Shown here one piece after another: positions 1,384 to 59,741 of a stretch of 64,000 nt of DNA (the first letter of the stretch is position 1; every line of letters starts with the position of its first letter). The position numbers and the translations under genes were made by a program. The notes under the pieces were generated by a model, which saw only the letters and a program-made list of their open reading frames with translations, did not search any database and was not told the DNA's origin. Location: positions 1-64,000 of the IMG/VR virus record IMGVR_UViG_3300009508_000011. One strand, given 5' to 3'.

Positions 1384-3582
1384 CTACTTTACTTTAGTAA
1401 ATGTGTAGGTTTTAGCAACTTGTTCAAGCTTACAGATACGGTAAACAACACCATCGGCCAAACGTAAAGAGAAATCACTAACACCAGTTTTAACTAGGCG
1501 TGAGAATATCGCTTGTACTGACTCATGTAATTGAGCATGGCTTGTATCTTGTATGTAGAACATTTCATCACTAGTAGCTGTAATGTTAAGTTCAGCAAGT
1601 GTGTAAGGTAATGCTAAGATATAACGCTCACGTTCAAGAAGAACTAGATTGTCAGTGGTCTTAGGTGCAGAATCACCTAACGCAGCTATTGCTTCATTAC
1701 GCATTTCGTCAGAAACTAGACGAATGTTATTGTGCATGATACGTGTAAGTATATCTTTCCACAATGCCGCTAGTTTAGCAGAACGGTTTTCAGCTAAGTA
1801 ATCAGTAACGTCACCGATGTCGTCAAATTCAGATATATCCAACTCAGCATCAAGTTGTGCATCTAAAGCATATCGAACATCACTAAGTAATTGTGCCGAT
1901 ACATATAACTGCATTGCACGTGGTAACGAACCAAGCTTCTCAACATATTCATCAAAACCATCAGAATCAAGAGATTCCATATCCGCGAATACTTGACGGT
2001 CAAAATCTTCAGCAACAACAAATGGTGTAACTAACTTGTCGTACGTTTCAATTGACTTATCTACAGAGCCTTGGGTCTGCGCTCTAATGGAAGCTACTGC
2101 AAACTCTTTGGTATCTGCCGTGGAGTAAGTAGCACGACTTTCATCGATAGTCTTACCAGTATGTTTAGTAACCATACCTTCATCTGCAACTTTACTTGCT
2201 GGTGCAGTAAGACTAGCACACTGTACAACGTGTTTAGGATGTACCGGAGCAACTGGTCCGTTTAGTGTGTGTTTAAGGTAATCCATATTTGCTTCCCCTT
2301 GTTTAACAGGAACTGTTTTAGATACGATTGACTCGTCTGAGTAATCAGCCCAGATATAATCAACCAGGATAGTTCCGTCGTCATATCCCATCTTGGCCTT
2401 ATCCGTATTTTCCAATTTAACTACTGGAATATCGGTTTGACCGTGAGGTAAGACTAGAACATTACACTGGTTGTCTTTACCAGTGACTACCGCAGCCTTA
2501 GGTAGATACTGACCATAGATTGCTCTGACTACACTATTTAATACAGGGCACTTGATTGCATCTGTAGAAGTTCGAGCATCGTCTTGCGCTATTGCTGATG
2601 TTACATTTACTTCGTGAGACATATCGGTAGTTCCTGTAGTTTGTGGCCCCTTTATTGGAGTGTCAAAGTTAACATCTTTACCAGTAGACTTAAATTCGTG
2701 TTGTGGTAAAAGTGCATCTAAATCGCTTTCGATTTCAGTAGTTACTTCATCAGTTTGTGACTGTGAAGACCTAGCTCCCCAAACCTTATCGGCATTCATG
2801 GGTTTCTTGTCTACCGCACCACGAGCTTTCCAATCTGTAGTAGATTCCTGTTTAGGTTTAGGACTGCTGTGTTGTTCGAAAGCTGTTGTGGTCGTACGTA
2901 TACCAGCAGCATTGCGAGAACTAACCTGAGGCTGACTATCACTAAAGAAGCCAGAGCGATTAGTACCACTTACTTGACGGTTCTGTGAACCCCAACCACT
3001 TTGAGCTGGTTGTTGGAAACCACCACGTTGTTGCTGCCATGCATTAGTTTGTGCAGGTTGACCAAACGCAGGTCGTTGGTTACCAAAATTACCAGAGGCT
3101 TGAGCGAACGTATTAGTTGGTTGACTAGATGCTACCAATTGCTCGGCTTGACCTTTCCATTCCATAGCACGTTGCTGATACTCAGGCGGTAATATCTGTT
3201 CAGCCAATTGAACATTACTACACCAGCGAACGGCAGCATCCATCTCAAAGATAGGTAACACCACTTCATTCTGGTACGCGTTAGGATTAACACCGCGTTG
3301 TCTTACTGCATCACACATACGTGCAACACAGCGAGCGTAGTCTTGGTTCTCAAAGTTGTTAGCACTTAGAGTGTTCCAAGTAGGAATGAAATATGGTTCA
3401 TCTATAACCACATTCTGTAAGACCCAACGGCCCATCCAGTATAAACCAGTAAACAGTGTAGGGTCGTTAACCTGAACCGTTGAAGGTGGGTTAATTGGCT
3501 GACTGTAATTAGGTTCCTGCTGGAGGGCTGCTTGTTGATTCATCAACTGGGTGAATTGTTGTTGATTACTCTGATTGAACAT
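1384..3582 (-). CDS. Large conserved hypothetical protein next to the nvRNAP gene, with a Q/G/F-rich disordered segment
   Basis: 732-aa ORF, AAGGA RBS; position downstream of gp123-like gene as in phiKZ-like phages. Confidence 0.8.
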   Translation of the reverse strand: MFNQSNQQQFTQLMNQQAALQQEPNYSQPINPPSTVQVNDPTLFTGLYWMGRWVLQNVVIDEPYFIPTWNTLSANNFENQDYARCVARMCDAVRQRGVNPNAYQNEVVLPIFEMDAAVRWCSNVQLAEQILPPEYQQRAMEWKGQAEQLVASSQPTNTFAQASGNFGNQRPAFGQPAQTNAWQQQRGGFQQPAQSGWGSQNRQVSGTNRSGFFSDSQPQVSSRNAAGIRTTTTAFEQHSSPKPKQESTTDWKARGAVDKKPMNADKVWGARSSQSQTDEVTTEIESDLDALLPQHEFKSTGKDVNFDTPIKGPQTTGTTDMSHEVNVTSAIAQDDARTSTDAIKCPVLNSVVRAIYGQYLPKAAVVTGKDNQCNVLVLPHGQTDIPVVKLENTDKAKMGYDDGTILVDYIWADYSDESIVSKTVPVKQGEANMDYLKHTLNGPVAPVHPKHVVQCASLTAPASKVADEGMVTKHTGKTIDESRATYSTADTKEFAVASIRAQTQGSVDKSIETYDKLVTPFVVAEDFDRQVFADMESLDSDGFDEYVEKLGSLPRAMQLYVSAQLLSDVRYALDAQLDAELDISEFDDIGDVTDYLAENRSAKLAALWKDILTRIMHNNIRLVSDEMRNEAIAALGDSAPKTTDNLVLLERERYILALPYTLAELNITATSDEMFYIQDTSHAQLHESVQAIFSRLVKTGVSDFSLRLADGVVYRICKLEQVAKTYTFTKVK

Positions 3583-3624
3583 CACGTTATCCTTTTATTT
3601 ATCAGAAATTAATTCATTGTTAAT

Positions 3625-50324: not shown

Positions 50325-52493
50325 TTATTTACCAGGTTTATACGGAGCGTATCTAAATTCAACGCCACCGCACATCATCAAATGTTTCATGAGTTGCAAT
50401 GGACGTGAGTTACCACGAGGTATTTTCTTACGGTTAACAACACAATCAATATCGGTAGGTTTCTCAGCCGTCATTATATTGTGGTTAATTTCTTCTGATG
50501 AATACAACGAGTTAGTTCTATCCAACAATTCCGCTACTATATCTGGGTCCATAACCGCAGACATTAGACGTACCTCTGATTCACCTGCAAAACGCACAGG
50601 AGATTCACGATAAGGGTTAAGATATTTATCCGCTCTACCCAACTGTACAACAATGCCGTGATGTTGACGCTTAGCAATTGAAGTAGTTGACCAATCTTCA
50701 CCAGTTTTATCTAGCAACATCATGTACTTAGTATCAATGGCTACAGGACGCTTAGTAGTAATCATCTTACCTGAGTTACCACGATAGGTAACAGGACCGA
50801 CAATACTTTTACAATTAGCTTCTATATCCTTGACTTGCTGAATACCGATGTTAGGACTATTTGGTGGCAGCATTAAAGTAATGGCTTCTTGGTCAGTTAG
50901 TTTAGGATTACCCACTTCACGAACATGATTATCTTGTTTATCTTTACTATCAAGATGTTTCATGCAATACCAATACATATACGGCGACGCTGCTTTATAA
51001 TACGCCATTAGAATCTGATAACCTTCTTCCAATGATGCACAAGCACGAACACGTCTAGCACATTGTGTACTGGCTTGGTTAGTCCACTGCTCAAATATCT
51101 GACCAACATTAGAACGCTTAATTACTGAAAGCGGGTCTTTAATAACATCTGCTACAATACCACAAGCAGTAGTAGGCATATCAGCATCTGGACGAATACC
51201 AACTATTACACCTTTTGTACCGTGAGTATCCGTAATCTTGTAACCGATTGTTGGAACCTTACGATAGGCATAAGTTATTTCAATGTTGAAGTCATCTAGA
51301 GGGGCTTTGTTCTTGGTGCGAACAACTCTATCCTTACTTGAGTCATTAAAGTTAGCATACGCTTCAACTACCCAAGAATGGAAAGCAGGAGTTATATCCA
51401 AGTTACCACGACGTTTACTATTGTTCTGCTGATAAAGCTCTATTATTTTTCTATAGAACAAATCCTTACTTTGCACATACTTCAACATCTCGTCATCCAT
51501 TCCAGTAGGAGTGGTTCGATATCTAGCATTGTGGTCAGTTAGTATTTCAACATCTACAATAGTTGCACCAGGCTGAGCATAAATCGTTTTGTCAAATTCG
51601 ATGTCTACTCTATCACCCAACAGATTACGAGGATGTAAATCTGAGATGGTTAAGTTTTCATCTATCGTACGGAAAGCCATAACTAAACCGTCTTCACGAA
51701 TTTTCTCACCGGGACCAGGGAAAGGTTTATAGTGATTCTCATCACCGTACAGATTAAGTGGGAATATATGCTTACCACAAGAAGCTGTACGAGTACCTAA
51801 CATAGTCGTTGCCAACTTACGTTGATAACTCTCACTAATTTCAAAACCATCCTCAATGATACCTGGGACAGTCATGTAAGCTACGTTAGTTTCAATACCG
51901 TACTCGTAGTTACCTTCATTATCTACACAAGGAGAATCTGCAAGTACTGTACCTTTACCAACATTGCCACCTTTAGTGATGCGTTGTAAAGCATGTGTGT
52001 TCTGTTTGTATTTCCAACCCAGACTTGTGTGCTGGAAGAAGTATTTCTCAAGTAGGATACTTCCGATTTCTTTTGTTTCAAAATCTTCATATACTACCAA
52101 GGTAGAAGGGTTTTCTTTAATAGCTCCCTGAGATACCTGCTTAGCATATTTAGGGAACACACCAAGGATTGTTGCATTGACAGGAATGCGTTGATTAAAA
52201 GTGTACTTACCAAATTCACGTTCCGTACCAGTAAGGTTACGACGTACTGTAGAGCCTTCAGTTACCAAACGTTGTTTAAGGTGAGATGCTTGCATCTGCT
52301 GACGAGATGCTGAGTTAACGGCTACCCAAGGATTCAAATTTGTTGGAGCACCAACAAGTTCAATATCTAATTCGTTGACTAAACTGGCCTTCCCCTCATC
52401 GTCAAGGGTCACGAACAGTTCTGTCTGTAAATCCATATACAATGGTTCACCGTCCATATCCGTGATATGAAGAAATCGTTTATCATCAATCAT
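50325..52493 (-). CDS. Non-virion RNA polymerase beta C-terminal subunit (gp71-73-like), uninterrupted
   Basis: GYKITDTHGTKG, PLSVIKRSNVGQIFE, VRFAGESEVR. Confidence 0.92.
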   Translation of the reverse strand: MIDDKRFLHITDMDGEPLYMDLQTELFVTLDDEGKASLVNELDIELVGAPTNLNPWVAVNSASRQQMQASHLKQRLVTEGSTVRRNLTGTEREFGKYTFNQRIPVNATILGVFPKYAKQVSQGAIKENPSTLVVYEDFETKEIGSILLEKYFFQHTSLGWKYKQNTHALQRITKGGNVGKGTVLADSPCVDNEGNYEYGIETNVAYMTVPGIIEDGFEISESYQRKLATTMLGTRTASCGKHIFPLNLYGDENHYKPFPGPGEKIREDGLVMAFRTIDENLTISDLHPRNLLGDRVDIEFDKTIYAQPGATIVDVEILTDHNARYRTTPTGMDDEMLKYVQSKDLFYRKIIELYQQNNSKRRGNLDITPAFHSWVVEAYANFNDSSKDRVVRTKNKAPLDDFNIEITYAYRKVPTIGYKITDTHGTKGVIVGIRPDADMPTTACGIVADVIKDPLSVIKRSNVGQIFEQWTNQASTQCARRVRACASLEEGYQILMAYYKAASPYMYWYCMKHLDSKDKQDNHVREVGNPKLTDQEAITLMLPPNSPNIGIQQVKDIEANCKSIVGPVTYRGNSGKMITTKRPVAIDTKYMMLLDKTGEDWSTTSIAKRQHHGIVVQLGRADKYLNPYRESPVRFAGESEVRLMSAVMDPDIVAELLDRTNSLYSSEEINHNIMTAEKPTDIDCVVNRKKIPRGNSRPLQLMKHLMMCGGVEFRYAPYKPGK

Positions 52494-52615: not shown

Positions 52616-52951
52616 ATGGATATCACCAAAAGCATGAATAGTGAAGGAGCTGACATTTTCTACGACTCCGATTTCCGGAGTGTTCTGGAAGACCATGTCC
52701 CTCTACTGAGAGATGATGCTGCTACAGAAATAGTTAATGTCAAATCTAACGTAGCCTATAAATTTGAATACGATTTAACTGGCTATTTATCATCTATTAA
52801 TGTACCACATTACTTACATTGGATAACAATGAGAATTAATGGATGGAAGAAGGATACAGAGTTCTTCAACCCAACTATGATTCGAATTCCGCATCGTAAT
52901 AGTGTAAATAAAATAAAACAAATGTTTGAAGCAACCACTACAAAAAAATAG
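52616..52951 (+). CDS. Small conserved protein, LysM/T4 gp53-like baseplate wedge candidate
   Basis: HWITMRING...IRIP pattern; TATG motif at 52581; GGAG RBS. Confidence 0.5.
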   Translation: MDITKSMNSEGADIFYDSDFRSVLEDHVPLLRDDAATEIVNVKSNVAYKFEYDLTGYLSSINVPHYLHWITMRINGWKKDTEFFNPTMIRIPHRNSVNKIKQMFEATTTKK

Positions 52952-53569: not shown

Positions 53570-54850
53570 TTACCAGCTACCACGATTGAAACTGTTTCCG
53601 AATCCACCTTGGTTACCTGTAGGGTAAGGGGTAGATTGGCGACCAGTTGGTTGTTGACCAAATGGGTTTCTTTGTGGGTTAGACCAACTAGGACCTGATT
53701 CTTGATGGAATCCAGTATTTTGTTGGAATGGTGTTGCTTGGCGAACAGGCTGTGCTTGTGGTTGTGCAAACATGTCTTGAAATCGTTTCTTACCACCATC
53801 CTGCTCAACTGGAGCTGGCTGTTTGTGTTGTTGGAACGGTTTCGGTGTAACAGGTTGTTGCTGAGCTAACTTTTCAGATAGCGTCATTTTACGACCTTCT
53901 TCACGTGCTTGTTCTGCCTTAGCACCCCAATCTAATTTCTTAGTTGGTTTGGCAACAGCAGCTGCTGTGTCTTCAACCTTTTCAACTTCATCAGGGTCAA
54001 CAGAACCTTCATTGCCACGAAGATTAGGAATAACACCTTTGTATTGGTCAAGGTCTTTAACATCATCAGCCCAATCGATATCGATTAATAGGTCTTCAAA
54101 GTCATCACCCCAAACTTTCTGGAACTTACGAAGAACTACATTTAAACGATGTGCGATATTGATGTAGGCGTGTAACAACGCGTGGAACGATGGAGCCACC
54201 ATTGAGTTACTACCAAAGCTATACGCTTGGTCGTTAATGTCAGGTAGAATGAAATCAAACATATCGAAGAATGGTTGGTAATCACACTTACGGAACTTAA
54301 CGCCAAATATAGTACGGTCTTTGTTTTCACTTTCAGTACGCAGCGGAGAATGAATACTGGCAAGGCGTTTAAATTTCTTACCGTCCATTTCACCAGAACG
54401 CTTAATGAATAAACCAATAATCTTTTCGGCTTCGTTAGGATTGATTTTATCCAATAGCGAATCCATTGACTTAAAGGTCTTCTCATCGAACTCAGGTACA
54501 AGAGTAAGGTACTCTTTTTGCTTAGTGGTTAATTGTTTTTGACGCGCTGGGTCAGTAGCAATTTCACCGAGTACGTGAATGATTGTTGCAGCAGTGAAGT
54601 TCAATTTAAATTGCATCTGTTTACGTAGTTCAAACAGAACAGCAGATTCACCACGCATTACATTTTCAGACATCGGATGGAAAGCAATACAGTTATCCCA
54701 ATCTGGGTTACGTAATACTTTCTTAGTAGGTAAGATTAATTGCTTATCAGCAATCTCCACAGGACCTTTAAAGGCTGTAATAGCACCTTCTTTATTAACA
54801 TCCCAACCAGCAGATTCTGCAATTGCCGTATATAATTCTATTAAATCCAT
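53570..54850 (-). CDS. Nucleus-localised protein (phiKZ gp70/Nlp-like) with Q/G/F-rich C-terminal tail
   Basis: 426 aa; AFHPMSENVMRGES motif; directly downstream of the gp69-like gene. Confidence 0.7.
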   Translation of the reverse strand: MDLIELYTAIAESAGWDVNKEGAITAFKGPVEIADKQLILPTKKVLRNPDWDNCIAFHPMSENVMRGESAVLFELRKQMQFKLNFTAATIIHVLGEIATDPARQKQLTTKQKEYLTLVPEFDEKTFKSMDSLLDKINPNEAEKIIGLFIKRSGEMDGKKFKRLASIHSPLRTESENKDRTIFGVKFRKCDYQPFFDMFDFILPDINDQAYSFGSNSMVAPSFHALLHAYINIAHRLNVVLRKFQKVWGDDFEDLLIDIDWADDVKDLDQYKGVIPNLRGNEGSVDPDEVEKVEDTAAAVAKPTKKLDWGAKAEQAREEGRKMTLSEKLAQQQPVTPKPFQQHKQPAPVEQDGGKKRFQDMFAQPQAQPVRQATPFQQNTGFHQESGPSWSNPQRNPFGQQPTGRQSTPYPTGNQGGFGNSFNRGSW

Positions 54851-54906
54851 TATGGACTCCCGTTTATTAAAGTCTTGTTGTAGGGGATGTAATCATCCCC
54901 GTGTTA

Positions 54907-56334
54907 TTACCAGTTATTGTTGTTACCGCCACCGAATATCTGAATGTTACTTGCAGGTTCGGTAGTCATCCCAATAGATGAGGTGATTGAATCGATATCA
55001 ACAGCCAATGAATTAAGGTCGTTGTTAGTAGAACCTATAATAGGTGCAGTAAGACCATCAGCAAACGAAGGTATTACATACGGTACAGGAACATCGCCAT
55101 CAACGCTAATCTCAATACGTGTCTCACCAAGAATATCTACATCAACATCTATAGTAACAATGAAGTTCCAGTTATTGGTAACATCAGGCATTACGATATT
55201 AATAAGACGGTCAAGGAACAGTTGAATGTAACTGTCTAGAGGAATGTCCTCTACGAATCCACGTGGTACATCCGTGATACGTGCATCAGGTTGCCCATTT
55301 AAAGTAGCATTGGTTGCTGAGAACTTAACACGAGTAAGTAGACACTCCATAGCTAGAGGAGGTACTGTATTCGATAAGATTGTTGACATAACTGCTGTTA
55401 CATCAGAACCTTTAAAGTGCTCAGTATGTGACGTGTGTTGCGTAGCTTGCTTAAGCGCAGGCTTCAACTCAAAGTGGTTAGTTACGTGCATGGTGGATGG
55501 TGACATATCACATAATGCTCCGTAGGTAATGAAACCATCTTCGAAGTAATTGTTTTGGTCATCCCATAGACGTAGTAAACCATCATCCTGAATACTAGAC
55601 TCACGAACCTTAGTTGTTGCTTCACTATATATGTCAGACATTGTACCTGCCATATGGTCAGCATTGTTCTGAGCCGAATGAAGTGCTTTCATTGACTTAG
55701 CCAAATACTGATTGTGGTTAGTGTTAGCACGTTCAGATTTAAATGCACCACGAGCAATGTTAGCTCTGAAATCTAGTACATCCATATCTTGTTGCTGGTA
55801 ATAACTAGTAGCCTGTAGACTATTGAATACATCTTCAGGACGCATTACTACACTTTGACTTTGGAAACCTTGACCATGTATCTTAAGGTCATTAACCACG
55901 ATGTGATTAGATTCAAAAATCTGCCACTGGTTAAGACCGATTAGACGCAATACAATAACGTTGTTAATGTACATACGCATGTTAGGGTCAAGACTACCAC
56001 CCATGCCTACACCTACGTGGTCGGTATAACCAATTACGATTTTACGAACCGGTGTATTAGCTACCATCATCTCCACTTCCATGAAGAAACGGTAACGGCG
56101 TTCACCCCAACCATGACTGATGTTAATATCACGACCAGCCTCAGAAGTAGGACGTATAATAGTAGAAGCTACACCAGCTACACTGTTAGCTGAAATGTTT
56201 CTACCATCTTGCGTAGCATTCTTTAATAGTTCAATGTTACGCGTATCGTCCAAATAAGTATTGTAGGGACGAGCTGCCTGTTGGTGGTACTCGCCTGTTT
56301 CAATAAACATTAACTTAGTTACGTTAAATGACAT
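54907..56334 (-). CDS. picA: Phage-nucleus protein importer PicA/Imp1 (gp69-like)
   Basis: 475 aa between gp68- and gp70-like genes; GWGERRYRFFMEVE and MRPEDVF motifs; assigned by synteny. Confidence 0.7.
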   Translation of the reverse strand: MSFNVTKLMFIETGEYHQQAARPYNTYLDDTRNIELLKNATQDGRNISANSVAGVASTIIRPTSEAGRDINISHGWGERRYRFFMEVEMMVANTPVRKIVIGYTDHVGVGMGGSLDPNMRMYINNVIVLRLIGLNQWQIFESNHIVVNDLKIHGQGFQSQSVVMRPEDVFNSLQATSYYQQQDMDVLDFRANIARGAFKSERANTNHNQYLAKSMKALHSAQNNADHMAGTMSDIYSEATTKVRESSIQDDGLLRLWDDQNNYFEDGFITYGALCDMSPSTMHVTNHFELKPALKQATQHTSHTEHFKGSDVTAVMSTILSNTVPPLAMECLLTRVKFSATNATLNGQPDARITDVPRGFVEDIPLDSYIQLFLDRLINIVMPDVTNNWNFIVTIDVDVDILGETRIEISVDGDVPVPYVIPSFADGLTAPIIGSTNNDLNSLAVDIDSITSSIGMTTEPASNIQIFGGGNNNNW

Positions 56335-56420
56335 TTTAACTTTCCTTTTATTTAGCAATAAGATGCTTGAAGTTGTTGATTACACTACGATAATATATAC
56401 TTAAATATCGTACGGATAGA

Positions 56421-57953
56421 TTATACGGTTTCTTCATTGTTGGTAGATAAACCACGGAAGCGTTTATCCAAGTCCATCAAGAAGCGTGCACACTCAGGTC
56501 TGAAGTTTCCGGGAACAATCAGTTGAGTACCTGTAAGATTTTCTTCATCAATTGACGGTGGTAGGTTATACTCGATATTGACTGAGCTAATCTTGTTAAG
56601 TAGAGAGTCAATCCAATCATTACCTACATTATTCTTAGGCGTAAGTTGTTTAGCACTTGAACGTCTATAATGCGGGTAGATATCAGATAGTATCTCTAGG
56701 TCTGCTCTTGACACACGAGACTTAACATGTCCTTCACCACCAAGGGAGAATTCATCTGGGTCACGTGCTGTGAACTTAGCACTACATAAATTACCAAGTA
56801 TCGGAAAACCACGAGTATAGTATATTGCCTGAACAATACCTAACAAATGACACATATGTACATGGGTAATGTGATACTGAGCACTAGGTGCGAATATCTC
56901 ACCAGCCAAGCTTCCACAAAGCATGTAATGGGCTTCGTTGATTACCAAGTTAGAACGATTGAGGGTATCAATACATTCCTTCACGAACTTGAGGTTAACA
57001 TCTGGTTCAAGACGTGTTGCCATCTCTCTCCAGTGTTTGATAATGTAATGTTCAATATCGCGAGGAACCCGTTTGGATAACTCTTGTCGAACACGTGTGT
57101 TTTCCATGATGGAGAGATTATCTTCATCTCGGTTAGTTTCGGTGGGTCGATGTTTATCACCAATACGCTCAAACGATTTATCCATCTGGTCCATTTTGGA
57201 TTTCAGATAGTTATACATTTTACGTACGATGTGTTCAGTACCGTCATTAGGGTCTATTAAAAGAACCTTACGAATAACTGCAAAGGCAAGTAACCACTCA
57301 GGTAATTCTTCAGTACTTAAAGCACCATATACTGCCGATGTTGTTTTACGACTGTATGTAGAGTTTACCGTGACGTATGTTGATAACCTTTCCCATTCTG
57401 GTCTAGCTAAGATACGTGGGTCTATAAGTTCCATTGTACGGTACTCTTTATAAGCAGTACCAACGTCTTTATAGATTACTGCCATATACTCACCAATAAT
57501 TGGGAGTAAAGGTTTGAGCACCATACCTAAACGAACCAGTCCCTTATACTCACTACGAATATAAGTTAATTCACGAGGGCCATCATCTGGACTATAATGT
57601 TCATTCACTTCACCTGCATTAATATCCAAGTGTAACTCTAGCCATCTAAACATTCTACAGACATCTAACGTATCGTACAGTCGTGAGATATGAGATTTCA
57701 ACTTAGCAGTTAAACGCTCACGGGAACGCACTGAATCAAATGAATCACGTATGTCATCGTAGATACCTAAAACATCTCTTTGTTCATCAGGTGTTAAAGA
57801 AGCAAGATATCGATTAAGTGGCTCTATGCTTCTACCTGGGTCGCTCACATTACTTCGGTCGAAGTTCTGCGTATTAAACTTGACTTGTAAATCATCAAGC
57901 TCAACATCCACAGTTGTGAACTTATTGTTAGTCGGGGTTATCGTTAAAGGCAT
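56421..57953 (-). CDS. nvRNAP promoter-specificity (sigma-like) subunit (gp68-like)
   Basis: 510 aa; TYIRSEY, LKPLLPIIGEY motifs; own early-like promoter at about 57995-58020; synteny. Confidence 0.75.
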   Translation of the reverse strand: MPLTITPTNNKFTTVDVELDDLQVKFNTQNFDRSNVSDPGRSIEPLNRYLASLTPDEQRDVLGIYDDIRDSFDSVRSRERLTAKLKSHISRLYDTLDVCRMFRWLELHLDINAGEVNEHYSPDDGPRELTYIRSEYKGLVRLGMVLKPLLPIIGEYMAVIYKDVGTAYKEYRTMELIDPRILARPEWERLSTYVTVNSTYSRKTTSAVYGALSTEELPEWLLAFAVIRKVLLIDPNDGTEHIVRKMYNYLKSKMDQMDKSFERIGDKHRPTETNRDEDNLSIMENTRVRQELSKRVPRDIEHYIIKHWREMATRLEPDVNLKFVKECIDTLNRSNLVINEAHYMLCGSLAGEIFAPSAQYHITHVHMCHLLGIVQAIYYTRGFPILGNLCSAKFTARDPDEFSLGGEGHVKSRVSRADLEILSDIYPHYRRSSAKQLTPKNNVGNDWIDSLLNKISSVNIEYNLPPSIDEENLTGTQLIVPGNFRPECARFLMDLDKRFRGLSTNNEETV

Positions 57954-57989
57954 TCTGTTCTCCATACTTTTATTAACAGGGTCTTAACT

Positions 57990-58020
57990 CACTAAGATAA
58001 TATATGTTTAAAATTATTTA
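57990..58020 (-). promoter_or_regulatory. Early-like promoter (TATATTATC)
   Basis: Minus strand AAATAATTTTAAACATATATTATC; near-identical copy at about 52536-52560 and a related one at about 56388-56408. Confidence 0.6.
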
Positions 58021-58509
58021 GTTGTAGTTCTCTAACCACATATTTATCGGGGTAAGACTAGCCACCGTAAATGGTTCATATTTATCACTATAGTCTCTCT
58101 CCACAGTGAAGTAATCAATCTCGGTTAAGATACCATCGAAGGTAGCACCAGAAACACCGATGGAATAATCCACATCTTCAAGTATTCCTATCCTAGGGTT
58201 ATAACCTAATACCTCACCAATTAACATCATCTCCCCTGAGTCTGCACATCTACTAATTGATAAATTATTAACGTAACAGAAGGTAAGTTCATCAGTTGGG
58301 GTAGTACGGCAATGTACACCTATAGAATCTGCACTGAAGTCCGTAATGGTAGGTTCACCTGACACTAACCTAAAGAAGCTTCTACACTTTATATTTCTAA
58401 ATAGTACATCGTAACCATTGGGGTATAGTTCTTTTTCTAGAGTAAGAAGTTTAACATACCACTTACCTAGTAAACTATGTCCTTTATTTATTGTTCTAAA
58501 ATTAGACAC
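58018..58509 (-). CDS. Accessory hypothetical protein
   Basis: 163 aa; AAGGGG RBS. Confidence 0.75.
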   Translation of the reverse strand: MSNFRTINKGHSLLGKWYVKLLTLEKELYPNGYDVLFRNIKCRSFFRLVSGEPTITDFSADSIGVHCRTTPTDELTFCYVNNLSISRCADSGEMMLIGEVLGYNPRIGILEDVDYSIGVSGATFDGILTEIDYFTVERDYSDKYEPFTVASLTPINMWLENYN

Positions 58510-58580
58510 TTCAATTCCCCTTTAAGCAAAAAAATAATGGGGACGAGAATCCCCAATATTGTTCCCTTTTTTAGAGGGTC

Positions 58581-59048
58581 TTACTTAAGATTCCAAAACA
58601 CTCTCGATTGACCGTTGGTAGAACGACGAGCTGCCTGAGCATCTTTCTTAAGTCTACCTTTACTTGGTCTATTCTTCTTATCTGCTTTAACAGCACGAGG
58701 ATTAACACAAGCTGGATAGACATCCATTTCTTTCAGGTACATGGTATCACGCCCAAACTCTTTATAAGCCTCGTTACCAATGAGACCTGTATGAAGATGT
58801 TCGAGATTACCCACCTCGTTTATAAAGAACTCACCGTGCGGTAGGAATTTACGTTCAAACTTCCCATGCCACTCACCATTAAACTCTTTATGTTTCTCAC
58901 CAGATGGGTATTCCGTAGGAGCACATGCGCTACACTTAGCGATGCCTAAATCTTCAGGCTTATTCATGGACTCCATATTTTTACAATGATACCAGCCAAG
59001 GGCTGTATTTTCACTACAGCCACATACTTGACATTGGTATATACTCAT
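58581..59048 (-). CDS. Cys-rich (CxxC x2) hypothetical phage protein
   Basis: CQVCGCSENT...CSAC...GEWHGKF. Confidence 0.75.
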   Translation of the reverse strand: MSIYQCQVCGCSENTALGWYHCKNMESMNKPEDLGIAKCSACAPTEYPSGEKHKEFNGEWHGKFERKFLPHGEFFINEVGNLEHLHTGLIGNEAYKEFGRDTMYLKEMDVYPACVNPRAVKADKKNRPSKGRLKKDAQAARRSTNGQSRVFWNLK

Positions 59049-59051
59049 TCT

Positions 59052-59741
59052 TTAAAATGGTATATCTTTATCGAATCCATCATTACCACCAGATGGAGCA
59101 GGTTTACTGTAACTATTGTTATTATTGTTGTTGCTGTAGTTGTTACCACCACCCTGACCGCCGTGTTGACCACGTGGTGCAGGTTCTTTGTAAATAGCAG
59201 TAGCAACGTTAGCAAGCAACTCACCAACATGGTTAAAGTAACCACGAGTAAATAACTTAGATTCGAAATCTTTAGGTACAGGTTGACCTTCAGCATCGGT
59301 TAAGTTATGGAAGAATGGGGACTGCATGTAGAAAATCGCTTTAGGGCGGTCTTTAGCAACCAATGAGATGTAGATACGACCATCTTCAGCTTTACCGATT
59401 ACGGTCTTGGAAATTTCTACAGGTGTATCAGAACGCTTACCGCCAGGCCATAAGTAGTTCTTGTTAGAAATGTAATAGCGACAAGGACCTGCATGGTTAA
59501 CAACTTCTTCGCTAAGTTCAAGTAATGCACGTGCTGTACGGATATCCATAGCTGCACGGATTAAACCATTATCTTTATCACCTTCAACGCCAGTATAGAC
59601 ATCGATACGTGGATTGCCATCTTCAGTAAGATAGAATAGGAAAGAAGGTGCTTGTTTAGCTCCGTCAATCTTCTCGCCATACATACGAAGTTTCTGATGG
59701 TCCAAAGCGGTTTTGGTACGCTTTTTAAATTGTTGTGACAT
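59052..59741 (-). CDS. chmC: ChmC-like nucleus-associated nucleic-acid-binding protein (gp67-like) with SSB-like C-terminal tip
   Basis: 229 aa upstream of the gp68-like gene; G/N-rich linker ending FDKDIPF; assigned by synteny. Confidence 0.65.
   Translation of the reverse strand: MSQQFKKRTKTALDHQKLRMYGEKIDGAKQAPSFLFYLTEDGNPRIDVYTGVEGDKDNGLIRAAMDIRTARALLELSEEVVNHAGPCRYYISNKNYLWPGGKRSDTPVEISKTVIGKAEDGRIYISLVAKDRPKAIFYMQSPFFHNLTDAEGQPVPKDFESKLFTRGYFNHVGELLANVATAIYKEPAPRGQHGGQGGGNNYSNNNNNNSYSKPAPSGGNDGFDKDIPF

What the first reader, a model, noticed from the sequence alone, without database searches (positions are those of the whole stretch)
53570..59741. Nlp-, PicA- and ChmC-like proteins all end in G/N/Q-rich tails capped by an aromatic residue
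The C-termini are ...NPFGQQ...NQGGFGNSFNRGSW (Nlp-like), ...QIFGGGNNNNW (PicA-like) and ...GGQGGGNNYSNNNNNNSY...DIPF (ChmC-like). Three clustered nucleus-associated proteins share a low-complexity, FG-bearing tail design. This suggests a common docking code or a disordered selectivity mesh at the shell pore, analogous to FG-nucleoporins.
Basis: inference. Interest (0 to 1): 0.62.

Follow-up and report, generated by a model that had tools for sequence, protein, structure and literature searches.

The report
Disordered tails on phage-nucleus shell proteins
Three neighbouring proteins of a nucleus-forming jumbo phage really do end in floppy, glycine/asparagine/glutamine-rich tails, but these are three different devices (one a near-copy of the bacterial SSB tail, two sharing a single co-evolving end residue) and not one nuclear-pore-like mesh.

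Summary
The tails are in the sequence as quoted and are not chance. Of about 230 ORFs in this 206-kb uncultured chimallivirus, the most G/N/Q-rich C-termini belong to ChmA (outside the window), the gp70-like protein, ChmC and PicA.

The proteins are orthologues of ChmC/Imp6 (PhiKZ gp67), PicA/Imp1 (gp69) and PhiKZ gp70/PhiPA3 gp64. All three are reported as shell-associated in PhiPA3.

The shared "FG-nucleoporin mesh" reading is not supported. The tails are 44, about 20 and about 140 residues long, and G/N/Q richness is lineage-specific for PicA and gp70.

- **ChmC:** an N/G-rich linker (already published) ends in an acidic tip, FDKDIPF. The tip is FDDDIPF in close relatives, identical to the E. 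coli SSB C-terminus.
- **gp70-like:** every orthologue has a long disordered tail, but its composition varies by lineage.
- **PicA and gp70-like:** the last residue co-varies. It is W/W in all members of this clade (ChmA too) and I/I in the sister lineage. It is identical in 10 of 30 lineages against 2.5 expected.

This suggests a shared C-terminal anchor pocket, which is inferred and untested. A tree-aware test was underpowered, and only 3 of 9 prospectively checked lineages matched.

The parts
59052..59741 (-). ChmC/Imp6 orthologue (229 aa)
   Evidence: tblastn hits PHIKZ067 (E 4e-14) and PhiPA3 061. phrog_3284 matches at E 1e-42. Synteny with the gp68, PicA and gp70 orthologues holds in all loci examined.
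59055..59186 (-). ChmC disordered tail (residues 186-229): N/G-rich linker plus acidic tip
   Evidence: Composition is G20 N20 P11 S9 %. The tail aligns with the N/G-rich tails of 18 orthologues. The published PhiPA3 equivalent is needed for condensates and for shell localisation.
59055..59075 (-). ChmC acidic tip FDKDIPF-COOH, resembling the bacterial SSB C-terminus
   Evidence: Positions -1 F, -2 P and -4 D are invariant in 10/10 clade members. 26 of 33 ChmC orthologues match D-[ILMVFT]-[PSG]-x?-[FWLM]-COOH, and three end in exactly FDDDIPF. The ChmC profile's best PDB hits are SSB tails, with consensus fddDipf aligned on FDDDIPF. The E. coli SSB tail was read from NC_000913.3. It is the only such C-terminus among about 230 ORFs.
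54907..56358 (-). PicA/Imp1 orthologue (483 aa from TTG; more likely 475 aa from the ATG at 56334)
   Evidence: tblastn hits PhiPA3 063 and the PhiKZ gp69 region (E 2e-42). phrog_3141 matches at E 1e-86. The AlphaFold2 model has mean pLDDT 79.6 and pTM 0.79. The near-identical database protein P0020 is 475 aa.
54910..54969 (-). PicA disordered tail (about the last 20 residues, ...TEPASNIQIFGGGNNNNW), ending in Trp (codon 54910-54912)
   Evidence: pLDDT is below 50 for the last 20 residues. The terminal W is present in 11/11 clade members, while every other tail position is shared by at most 7/11 and all last-12-mers differ. PicA orthologues usually end in a hydrophobic residue (W, I, V, L, F or Y); 4 of the 30 lineages tabulated end in K, N, D or N.
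53570..54850 (-).
   Evidence: tblastn hits the PhiKZ, 201phi2-1 and PhiPA3 gp70/gp126/gp64 genes. phrog_3520 matches at E 2e-88. Residues 1-285 fold with pLDDT above 90. No known fold was found: best VIA Z 6.4, Foldseek E above 0.3.
53573..53992 (-). gp70-like disordered tail (residues 287-426): Q/P/G-rich with F/W/Y about every 4-14 residues in its last third, conserved short motifs (KKRFQDM, RQSTPY), terminal Trp (codon 53573-53575)
   Evidence: pLDDT is below 50 from residue 287. Composition, aromatic spacing and [FW]G enrichment were computed; pooled over the clade, 69 dipeptides were observed against 19.8 +/- 4.1 expected. The terminal W is present in 10/10 clade members.
56421..57965 (-). 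nvRNAP subunit gp68 orthologue (514 aa); context gene with no low-complexity tail, used as a negative control
   Evidence: phrog_3209 matches at E 8.5e-75. BLASTP matches the gp68-family ORFs of all loci. Its last residue shows no excess of matches with PicA or gp70.
58018..59048 (-). Two small ORFs (163 aa, and a 155-aa Cys-rich protein) lying between ChmC and gp68; context only
   Evidence: One search lists both. phrog_11861 matches the 155-aa ORF. Genes of similar size occupy this position in clade relatives but not in PhiKZ or PhiPA3.

Best explanation
The three tails are genuine disordered C-terminal extensions on orthologues of three chimallivirus proteins that sit at the phage-nucleus shell. 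They are three different devices that share only one element.

(1) ChmC carries an SSB-style tail. The N/G-rich flexible linker is already shown, in PhiPA3, to drive RNA condensates and shell localisation. It ends in an acidic tip (FDKDIPF) that is the truly conserved part and is residue-for-residue like the bacterial SSB C-terminus. I infer that it works as SSB tips do: as a short docking peptide for partner enzymes, or as a self-inhibitory mimic of nucleic acid on the Whirly core.

(2) The gp70-like protein has a well-folded 285-residue domain of unknown fold followed by a 140-residue disordered tail. All orthologues have such a tail, but its composition differs by lineage. Here it is Q/G/P/N-rich with F/W-Gly 'stickers'. 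I infer a tether or a multivalent cohesive role.

(3) PicA has only a short linker of about 20 residues.

The shared element is the very last residue. PicA, gp70-like and ChmA all end in Trp throughout this clade, while the residues before it drift freely. In other lineages the PicA and gp70 ends change together (I/I, V/V, LGLL/LGLL, DLF/DLF, F/F). I infer that both termini plug into one and the same pocket. The most likely site is the ChmA lattice, whose own C-terminal segment is known to dock on neighbouring protomers.

Shown: sequence features, conservation and co-variation. Inferred: every binding step.
For: Genome-wide enrichment of such tails in exactly ChmA, gp70-like, ChmC and PicA comes.

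ChmC tip: -1 F, -2 P and -4 D are invariant in the clade. 26 of 33 orthologues keep the motif, and three have exactly FDDDIPF. An unbiased profile search of the PDB returns SSB tails as top hits, with fddDipf aligned on FDDDIPF. The E. coli SSB tail was read from the genome. No OB-fold SSB (PF00436) is encoded in this phage record. ChmC co-purifies with the RNase HI-like Rhc in Goslar (PMC13648698).

Terminal residue: W in 11/11 PicA, 10/10 gp70-like and 4/4 ChmA of the clade, with all other tail positions variable. A prediction made beforehand, for the sister lineage whose PicA ends in Ile, was met: its gp70 also ends in Ile. The last residue is identical in 10 of 30 lineages against 2.5 expected under permutation (P about 1e-5; 9 of 22 on conservative collapsing). 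Control pairs (PicA-gp68, gp70-gp68, PicA-ChmC) show no excess. ChmA, PicA and gp70 all match in this clade, in Goslar and in an IMG/VR lineage. ChmA CTS2, its last 10 residues, docks on a neighbouring protomer and is required for assembly.
Against: No binding was shown. The one complex prediction (PicA + ChmC) gave no verdict. The tree-aware sign test on aromatic versus aliphatic ends had only 4 independent contrasts (3 same way, 0 opposite) and p 0.25. The permutation test treats lineages as independent. Among 9 lineages looked up after the hypothesis was formed, only 3 matched (binomial P 0.03). In about a third of lineages gp70 ends in Arg and does not match PicA. In Pseudomonas phages ChmA ends in Tyr while PicA and gp70 end in Leu, so ChmA mimicry is not general. 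PhiKZ gp70 did not co-purify with Imp1. In Goslar, ChmC lacking its tail still forms shell puncta. The ChmC-SSB similarity has weak E-values (0.19, 0.66) because the region is low-complexity, and a search with the tail alone found nothing. That the literature does not mention an SSB-like tip holds only for the library searched.
Confidence: 0.5

Rival explanations
1. One reading: the three tails together form an FG-nucleoporin-like disordered selectivity mesh at a shell pore.
For: The gp70-like tail of this clade is uncharged-polar with F/W next to Gly more often than shuffling gives; pooled over the clade, 69 dipeptides against 19.8 expected. All three orthologues are shell-associated in PhiPA3. 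PicA is the import factor.
Against: There are only 5, 1 and 0 FG-type dipeptides in the three tails. The PicA tail is about 20 residues and its FG is absent in 4 of 11 clade members. gp70 tails elsewhere are R/D/E-rich (about 46-64% charged residues) or Met/Gln/Pro-rich with 2-3% aromatic residues. Import selectivity is reported to map to folded surfaces of Imp1/PicA and of the cargo, not to terminal signals. No wide pore to be filled has been described in the papers read.
Confidence: 0.07
2. The tails mainly act as condensate-forming disordered regions with a shared 'grammar'. They co-partition ChmC-RNA droplets, gp70-like and other phage proteins at the shell. The terminal residues are just the last stickers.
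For: The ChmC tail is required for RNA condensates in vitro. The gp70-like tail has a sticker-spacer design. A fourth protein in the window (1384-3585, 733 aa) has an internal Q/G-rich stretch with FG/WG motifs of the same style. The E. coli SSB linker itself contains WGQPQ, like the clade's gp70 tails.
Against: This does not explain why exactly the last residue is invariant while the other stickers drift. It does not explain the concerted W/W to I/I switch. It does not explain why ChmC conserves a specific acidic tip and not its bulk composition. The PicA tail is too short to drive condensation.
Confidence: 0.25
3. The tails are neutral low-complexity drift, and matching ends are coincidence or shared ancestry.
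For: Composition is lineage-specific. The tree-aware test is not significant. Six of 9 prospective lineages do not match. The 'last hydrophobic within five residues' criterion was defined post hoc.
Against: Every orthologue of gp70 and ChmC retains a tail. The terminal W is kept in all clade members, at 60-82% PicA identity among the database relatives, while neighbouring positions vary in sequence and length. Matched ends occur for five different residue types (W, I, V, L, F), which needs at least four concerted changes. Control protein pairs show no excess. Deleting the ChmC tail has phenotypes in PhiPA3.
Confidence: 0.15
4. The ChmC tip is a mimic of the host SSB C-terminus. It either recruits host SSB-partner enzymes to the phage nucleus or titrates them away from host SSB.
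For: The tip is identical (FDDDIPF) or nearly so to the E. coli SSB tip. ChmC orthologues bind ssDNA as well as RNA and are very abundant. A host topoisomerase is imported into the PhiKZ nucleus. No OB-fold SSB is found in this phage record.
Against: The host of this phage is unknown, so its SSB tip could not be compared. Pseudomonas phages insert a residue (IPxF), and Goslar and 201phi2-1 have degenerate tips. An acidic tail with a terminal aromatic residue is a common convergent feature of ssDNA-binding proteins (general knowledge). It may act only in cis, as the ChmC authors suggest for the S/D/E cluster.
Confidence: 0.2

Closest known systems
ChmC / Imp6 of PhiPA3, PhiKZ and Goslar (Enustun et al., NAR 2024, PMC11077065)
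   Same: It is an orthologue by sequence and synteny. It has the same tail plan: an N/G-rich stretch of about 40 residues followed by an acidic stretch. The published tail is needed for RNA condensates and, in PhiPA3, for shell localisation.
   Different: The paper describes the end as an S/D/E 'electronegative cluster' and nowhere mentions SSB. Here the conserved element is a defined tip, F-D-x-D-[IVM]-P-F-COOH, identical in relatives to the SSB tip.
Bacterial SSB C-terminal tail (intrinsically disordered linker plus acidic tip ...DFDDDIPF)
   Same: It has a G/Q/N/P-rich linker of similar length and the same terminal heptapeptide. It sits on an oligomeric single-strand nucleic-acid binder. 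The linker is linked to phase separation (ChmC oligomer and binding).
   Different: The core is reported as a Whirly fold, not an OB fold. PF00436 finds nothing in this genome. Partner binding by the tip is untested. ChmC prefers RNA.
ChmA (chimallin) C-terminal segments CTS1/CTS2 (Laughlin et al. 2022)
   Same: It is a flexible G/N/Q/S-rich linker ending in a short segment, with a terminal aromatic residue, that docks on a neighbouring protomer. In this clade ChmA ends in the same residue (W) as PicA and gp70-like.
   Different: Docking of the PicA or gp70 ends on ChmA is only inferred. In Pseudomonas phages the ChmA end (FY) differs from the PicA/gp70 ends (LGLL).
FG-nucleoporins (cohesive GLFG-type domains)
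   Same: The polar, nearly uncharged distal part of the gp70-like tail has aromatic-Gly dipeptides spaced about every 8 residues.
   Different: There are an order of magnitude fewer repeats. The feature is not conserved across orthologues. No pore or transport receptor is known. PicA and ChmC do not fit.
PicA/Imp1 and PhiKZ gp70 / PhiPA3 gp64 (Morgan 2024; Kokontis 2024 preprint; Enustun 2023)
   Same: They are orthologues, with the same gene order ChmC-gp68-PicA-gp70 beside nvRNAP genes. Both localise to the shell in PhiPA3.
   Different: None of the papers read analyses their C-terminal tails. The co-varying terminal residue is, as far as the searched library shows, undescribed.

Membership tests
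ChmC / Imp6 | Sequence homology to PhiPA3 gp61 / PhiKZ gp67 | tested here: met
   tblastn gives E 4e-14 to PHIKZ067 and 6e-12 to PhiPA3 061. phrog_3284 matches at E 1e-42.
ChmC / Imp6 | Position in the conserved nvRNAP block, upstream of gp68 and PicA | tested here: met
   The gene order is the same in PhiKZ, PhiPA3, 201phi2-1, Goslar and more than 25 other loci. Two small ORFs are inserted in this clade.
ChmC / Imp6 | Whirly-fold homotetramer that binds RNA | not tested
The fold and the binding are taken from PMC11077065.
ChmC / Imp6 | C-terminal N/G-rich disordered region followed by an acidic stretch | tested here: met
PicA / Imp1 | Sequence homology and synteny with PhiPA3 gp63 / PhiKZ gp69 | tested here: met
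   tblastn gives E 6e-38 to 2e-42 over about 90% of the protein. phrog_3141 matches at E 1e-86. The annotated neighbours agree.
PicA / Imp1 | Required for selective protein import; binds Imp6 | not testable with these tools
   The complex prediction with ChmC gave no verdict.
PhiKZ gp70 / PhiPA3 gp64 family | Homology of the N-terminal domain of about 285-330 residues, and position directly downstream of PicA | tested here: met
   Shown. There are 16 invariant columns in alignment A4.
PhiKZ gp70 / PhiPA3 gp64 family | Long disordered C-terminal region | tested here: met
   pLDDT is below 50 from residue 287. Tails of 110-301 residues are present in all 34 orthologues measured, with lineage-specific composition.
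FG-nucleoporin-like mesh | Many FG repeats on long hydrophilic spacers in each component | tested here: not met
   There are 5, 1 and 0 FG-type dipeptides, and tails of 144, about 20 and 44 residues.
FG-nucleoporin-like mesh | FG character conserved among orthologues | tested here: not met
   R/D/E-rich and M/Q/P-rich gp70 tails occur in other lineages. The PicA FG is lost within the clade.
FG-nucleoporin-like mesh | Anchored around a transport channel and bound by transport receptors | not testable with these tools
   No such pore or receptor is described in the papers read.
Bacterial SSB (PF00436) | OB-fold ssDNA-binding core | tested here: not met
   Pfam gives no hit for the 229-aa protein. 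PF00436 is absent from the whole phage record. So this is not a member, only SSB-like in its tail.
Bacterial SSB (PF00436) | Disordered G/Q/P/N-rich linker ending in an acidic tip D-D-D-I-P-F | tested here: met
   This phage has FDKDIPF and three relatives have FDDDIPF. The profile consensus aligns on the SSB tip.
ChmA-type docking tail (CTS2-like) | Same terminal residue as ChmA of the same phage | tested here: inconclusive
   Met in this clade (W), in Goslar (F) and in one IMG/VR lineage (F). Not met in the Pseudomonas, Xanthomonas and Burkholderia phages.
ChmA-type docking tail (CTS2-like) | Terminal segment binds a groove on a ChmA protomer | not testable with these tools

The most novel reading that the evidence does not exclude
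ChmC is the chimallivirus counterpart of SSB. It is a Whirly-fold oligomer that has convergently acquired the whole bacterial SSB tail. It uses the FDDDIPF-type tip to recruit phage or host genome-maintenance and RNA-processing enzymes to single-stranded nucleic acid at or inside the phage nucleus; candidates are the RNase HI-like Rhc, helicases and topoisomerase. Separately, PicA, the gp70 family and in some lineages ChmA share a one-residue C-terminal 'plug' code that inserts them into the same pocket of the shell lattice. If so, the identity of the last residue would help determine which proteins can join which phage's shell.
Probability: 0.25. Interest if true: 0.8.

Novelty: new member of a known kind. 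Interest (0 to 1): 0.5.

Why it matters
How proteins attach to, and pass through, the protein shell of the phage nucleus is an open question. The factors (PicA/Imp1, ChmC/Imp6, gp70/gp64) are known, but their contacts with the shell are not.

Two concrete, cheap-to-test handles come out of this window:
- a defined seven-residue tip on ChmC that equals the bacterial SSB docking peptide;
- a single terminal residue that PicA and the gp70 family (and sometimes ChmA) share and change together.

Both predict that C-terminal tags or truncations will disturb function. That would also be a practical warning for localisation studies that use C-terminal GFP fusions.

If the SSB analogy holds, it would link mRNA handling, replication factors and import at the shell through a motif whose biochemistry is already well understood. 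If neither holds, the tails are ordinary lineage-specific disordered regions, and the only established part is the published ChmC condensate tail.

Tried and rejected
- **Nucleotide search:** megablast of the region against GenBank phages found nothing. The phage is known only from metagenomes.
- **Pfam:** nothing above threshold for any of the nine proteins.
- **Locus search with a PicA alignment:** the 17-sequence alignment was too divergent for the search for related loci. Single-protein scans with P0042 and P0034 found no IMG/VR relatives.
- **Complex prediction, PicA + ChmC (1:1, own alignments):** score 0.00, no verdict. This is not evidence for or against binding.
- **Cis-docking of the terminal Trp:** not seen. 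The tails of PicA and gp70-like have pLDDT 34-43 to the very end.
- **Fold of the gp70-like N-domain:** Foldseek against the PDB gave no hit at E below 0.3. The VIA-wide best was Z 6.4, to a designed helical protein. A run of ribosome-hibernation-factor chains at Z about 4-5 lies within the noise the tool describes. I do not assign a fold.
- **Sequence search of the ChmC tail alone against the PDB:** no hit. Only the full profile reached the SSB tails, at weak E-values.
- **Tree-aware sign test of aromatic versus aliphatic ends:** 4 independent contrasts, p 0.25, underpowered.
- **Looser criterion:** 'last hydrophobic residue within the final five' gave 13 of 23 identical. It was defined after seeing the data, so I do not rest on it.
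- **Clamp-binding or PDZ-type recognition of the LGLL/W ends:** considered from memory only and not tested, so not claimed.
- **Literature:** none of the papers read analyses the PicA or gp70 tails or an SSB-like ChmC tip. This holds only for the library searched. The journal version of the Imp1 paper was not among the search results, so only the preprint was read.
- not used.

Full report
**What is there.** The window is the first 64 kb of a 206,117-bp IMG/VR virus record with direct terminal repeats. Between 53570 and 59741 the minus strand carries six ORFs:
- 59052-59741, 229 aa
- 58581-59048, 155 aa
- 58018-58509, 163 aa
- 56421-57965, 514 aa
- 54907-56358, 483 aa
- 53570-54850, 426 aa

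Megablast finds no close GenBank phage and Pfam finds nothing. PHROG profiles match five of these six ORFs strongly; the 163-aa ORF has no family. By tblastn the 229-aa protein lands on PHIKZ067 and PhiPA3 061, the 483-aa protein on PhiPA3 063 and the PhiKZ gp69 gene, and the 426-aa protein on the next gene, PhiKZ gp70 / PhiPA3 064 / 201phi2-1 gp126. The 514-aa protein is the gp68-type nvRNAP subunit.

The three are therefore ChmC/Imp6, PicA/Imp1 and the gp70/gp64 family. In PhiPA3 all three localise to the nuclear shell (PMC10643120). In PhiKZ, Imp1 binds Imp6 directly but not gp70, and gp70 is listed among nuclear proteins (bioRxiv 10.1101/2024.03.27.586873). Identity to cultured phages is only 22-35%. 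Ten to twelve metagenomic relatives at 60-99% PicA identity form a clade with this phage.

**Is it more than chance?** I called about 230 non-overlapping ORFs over the whole record and ranked them by G+N+Q content of the last 30 residues. Ranks 1, 2, 4 and 6 go to a 631-aa protein at 71140-73035 of the record (outside the window), the gp70-like protein, ChmC and PicA. The 631-aa protein is ChmA, the shell protein itself. Eight ORFs end in Trp, and three of them (ChmA, gp70-like, PicA) are among the six most G/N/Q-rich tails (P 5e-4, post hoc). ChmC is the only ORF ending in an acidic-[ILMV]-P-F motif.

**The tails are not one design.**
- *PicA.* AlphaFold2 with my own alignment gives a confident model (mean pLDDT 79.6, pTM 0.79) in which only the last 20 residues are disordered.
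- *gp70-like.* Residues 1-285 have pLDDT above 90 and residues 287-426 are uniformly below 50.
- *ChmC.* The tail is 44 residues by alignment.

Across orthologues the gp70 tail is always present (110-301 residues) but its make-up changes by lineage:
- Q/G/N/P with F/W in this clade
- Q/P/M in the Erwinia, Salmonella and Pseudomonas phages
- R/D/E, with about 46-64% charged residues, in the Serratia, Klebsiella and Burkholderia phages and one IMG/VR lineage

The G/N run of PicA (GGGNNNNW) is unique to this phage. Relatives at 75% identity have GSADSSKW or ADQGGTGNSNW, and the 'FG' is replaced by IIT in four of eleven. FG-type dipeptides number 5, 1 and 0 in the three tails. This does not fit an FG-nucleoporin-like mesh.

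Within the clade, aromatic residues of the gp70-like tail sit next to Gly far more often than shuffling gives (69 against 19.8 +/- 4.1, pooled over related sequences). The tail also holds conserved short motifs (KKRFQDM, RQSTPY). It is therefore a sticker-and-spacer region, not featureless.

**ChmC: an SSB-type tail.** The N/G-rich region followed by an acidic region is already published for PhiPA3, PhiKZ and Goslar. Deleting it abolishes RNA condensates in vitro and, in PhiPA3, shell localisation, whereas Goslar ChmC without it still forms shell puncta (PMC11077065).

What I add is that the conserved part is the extreme tip. In ten clade members -1 F, -2 P and -4 D are invariant, while the linker varies in length and sequence. 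26 of 33 orthologues from very different phages fit D-[ILMVFT]-[PSG]-x?-[FWLM]-COOH, and three end in FDDDIPF. A profile of the family searched against all PDB sequences returns single-stranded DNA-binding proteins as its best hits (7f2n, and 1eqq which is E. coli SSB). The match lies in the tails, with the consensus 'fddDipf' aligned on 'FDDDIPF'. The E-values (0.19, 0.66) are weak, as expected for low-complexity sequence. I read the E. coli SSB tail from NC_000913.3 to avoid relying on memory...[45 protein letters not shown].

The ChmC paper does not mention SSB, and a text search linking jumbo phages, Whirly and SSB tips found nothing relevant. No OB-fold SSB is detectable in this phage record. 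In Goslar, ChmC co-purifies with Rhc, a protein with an RNase HI-like domain (PMC13648698).

From established knowledge of SSB, the tip is the docking site for many partner proteins, and acidic tails of ssDNA-binding proteins also fold back on their own binding surface. I infer that the ChmC tip does one or both of these. That is inference. The ChmC authors' 'electronegative cluster' idea covers the second possibility.

**The shared element: the last residue.** In this clade PicA ends in W in 11 of 11 sequences and gp70-like in 10 of 10. No other position of the last 16 is shared by more than 7, and all last-12-mers differ. ChmA ends in ...ARTKW or ...ARTTW in all four genomes checked.

Comparing 19 phages first, I saw that PicA and gp70 ends resemble each other within a phage and differ between phages:

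| Phage | PicA end | gp70 end |
|---|---|---|
| PhiPA3 | DLGLL | GLGLL |
| PS119XW | DLGLV | GLGLV |
| 201phi2-1 | NLGLL | GMGLI |
| Goslar | KGNF | VNRF |
| LucasX | SGLL | GGVL |
| TARA contig | DSIV | PGGV |

I then made a prediction. P0030 is a PicA at 54% identity that ends in ...PGAI, so its neighbouring gp70 should end in an aliphatic residue and not in W. The contig shows ...GNGSI. Another lineage fetched afterwards has ...GNFNF / ...GRGRF, and Halocynthia phage JM-2012 has ...EDLF / ...GDLF.

Over 30 lineages the last residue is identical in 10 against 2.5 expected when gp70 ends are permuted (P about 1e-5). After conservative collapsing of related phages it is 9 of 22 against 2.0 expected. 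The same test on PicA-gp68, gp70-gp68 and PicA-ChmC shows no excess. ChmA shares the residue too in this clade (W), in Goslar (F) and in one IMG/VR lineage (F).

**Limits of that result.**
- The permutation treats lineages as independent.
- On a PicA tree, only four independent contrasts of aromatic versus aliphatic ends exist (three go the same way, none the opposite), which cannot reach significance (p 0.25).
- Of nine lineages examined after the hypothesis was formed, three matched (chance 0.083 each; P 0.03).
- In about a third of lineages gp70 ends in Arg, and the rule fails there as stated.
- In Pseudomonas phages ChmA ends in Tyr while PicA and gp70 end in Leu.

I therefore hold the co-variation as real but partial. 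The common-pocket explanation is an inference. ChmA's own last ten residues dock on a neighbouring protomer and are needed for assembly (Laughlin et al.). That makes the lattice the most economical candidate receptor, but nothing here shows it.

**What did not work.** The one complex prediction allowed (PicA with ChmC) returned no verdict. Neither tail is predicted to dock back on its own domain. The gp70-like domain has no recognisable fold.

**Verdict.** The ChmC tail is already known apart from its SSB-like tip. These are orthologues of known proteins, so I file the finding as a new member of a known kind. It carries two new, testable details of moderate interest.

Noticed in passing
window 1384-3585 (-): A 733-aa ORF has no Pfam, PHROG or GenBank-phage match. 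It has a Q/N-rich N-terminus and an internal Q/G-rich disordered stretch (about residues 150-215: ...FGNQRPAFGQPAQTNAWQQQRGGFQQPAQSGWGSQNRQ...) with FG/WG motifs in the same style as the gp70-like tail. It is one of only six ORFs in the genome with a 30-residue window of at least 45% G+N+Q.
   Followed up: partly
G000 record 71140-73035 (-), outside the window (L009:7140-9035): ChmA, the shell protein, has the most G/N/Q-rich C-terminus of the genome and ends ...GGYTNQNARTKW. This tail is far better conserved among clade relatives than the PicA and gp70 tails.
   Followed up: yes
window 56334-56358: The PicA ORF as listed starts at a TTG. The near-identical database protein is 475 aa, which implies the ATG eight codons downstream (MSFNVTK...) is the real start.
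   Followed up: partly
window 58018-59048 (-): Two small genes lie between ChmC and gp68: a 155-aa Cys-rich protein with CxxC pairs (phrog_11861), and a 163-aa protein with no family. They are present in clade relatives but absent at this position in PhiKZ, PhiPA3, 201phi2-1 and Goslar.
   Followed up: no
window 52616-52951 (+): A gene of about 110 aa (phrog_3455) is transcribed divergently just downstream of the gp70 orthologue. An opposite-strand gene of 95-121 aa lies between gp70 and the RNAP beta gene in most chimallivirus loci examined. Its function is unknown.
   Followed up: no
L046 (E. coli K-12 ssb) versus the gp70-like tails of clade relatives (P0006, L040): The E. coli SSB linker contains [10 protein letters not shown]. 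Several gp70-like tails of this clade carry repeated [WF]GQPQ units (for example TWGQPQ, SWGQPQ, SFGQPQ). So the SSB-linker style is not confined to ChmC.
   Followed up: no
gp70 orthologues in L018, L020, L022, L023, L041-L045: In the Serratia, Klebsiella, Burkholderia and Erwinia PhiEaH1 phages and one IMG/VR lineage, the gp70 tail is an R/D/E-rich mixed-charge region (RDRDYDDR-type repeats) instead of a polar one. It often ends in aromatic-Arg-Arg.
   Followed up: partly
model m4a34d7d2d39d, residues about 64-249 of window 53570-54850: The structure search lists many ribosome hibernation factor chains (HPF/RaiA/pY) at Z 4-5 over the same part of the gp70-like domain. This is below the level the tool regards as meaningful, but they are the most recurrent family in the list.
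   Followed up: no
window 50325-52493 (-): A 722-aa ORF lies next to the cluster. Its counterparts in related contigs carry PF00562 (RNA polymerase beta), consistent with the nvRNAP gene block that surrounds chmC, picA and the gp70 orthologue.
   Followed up: no
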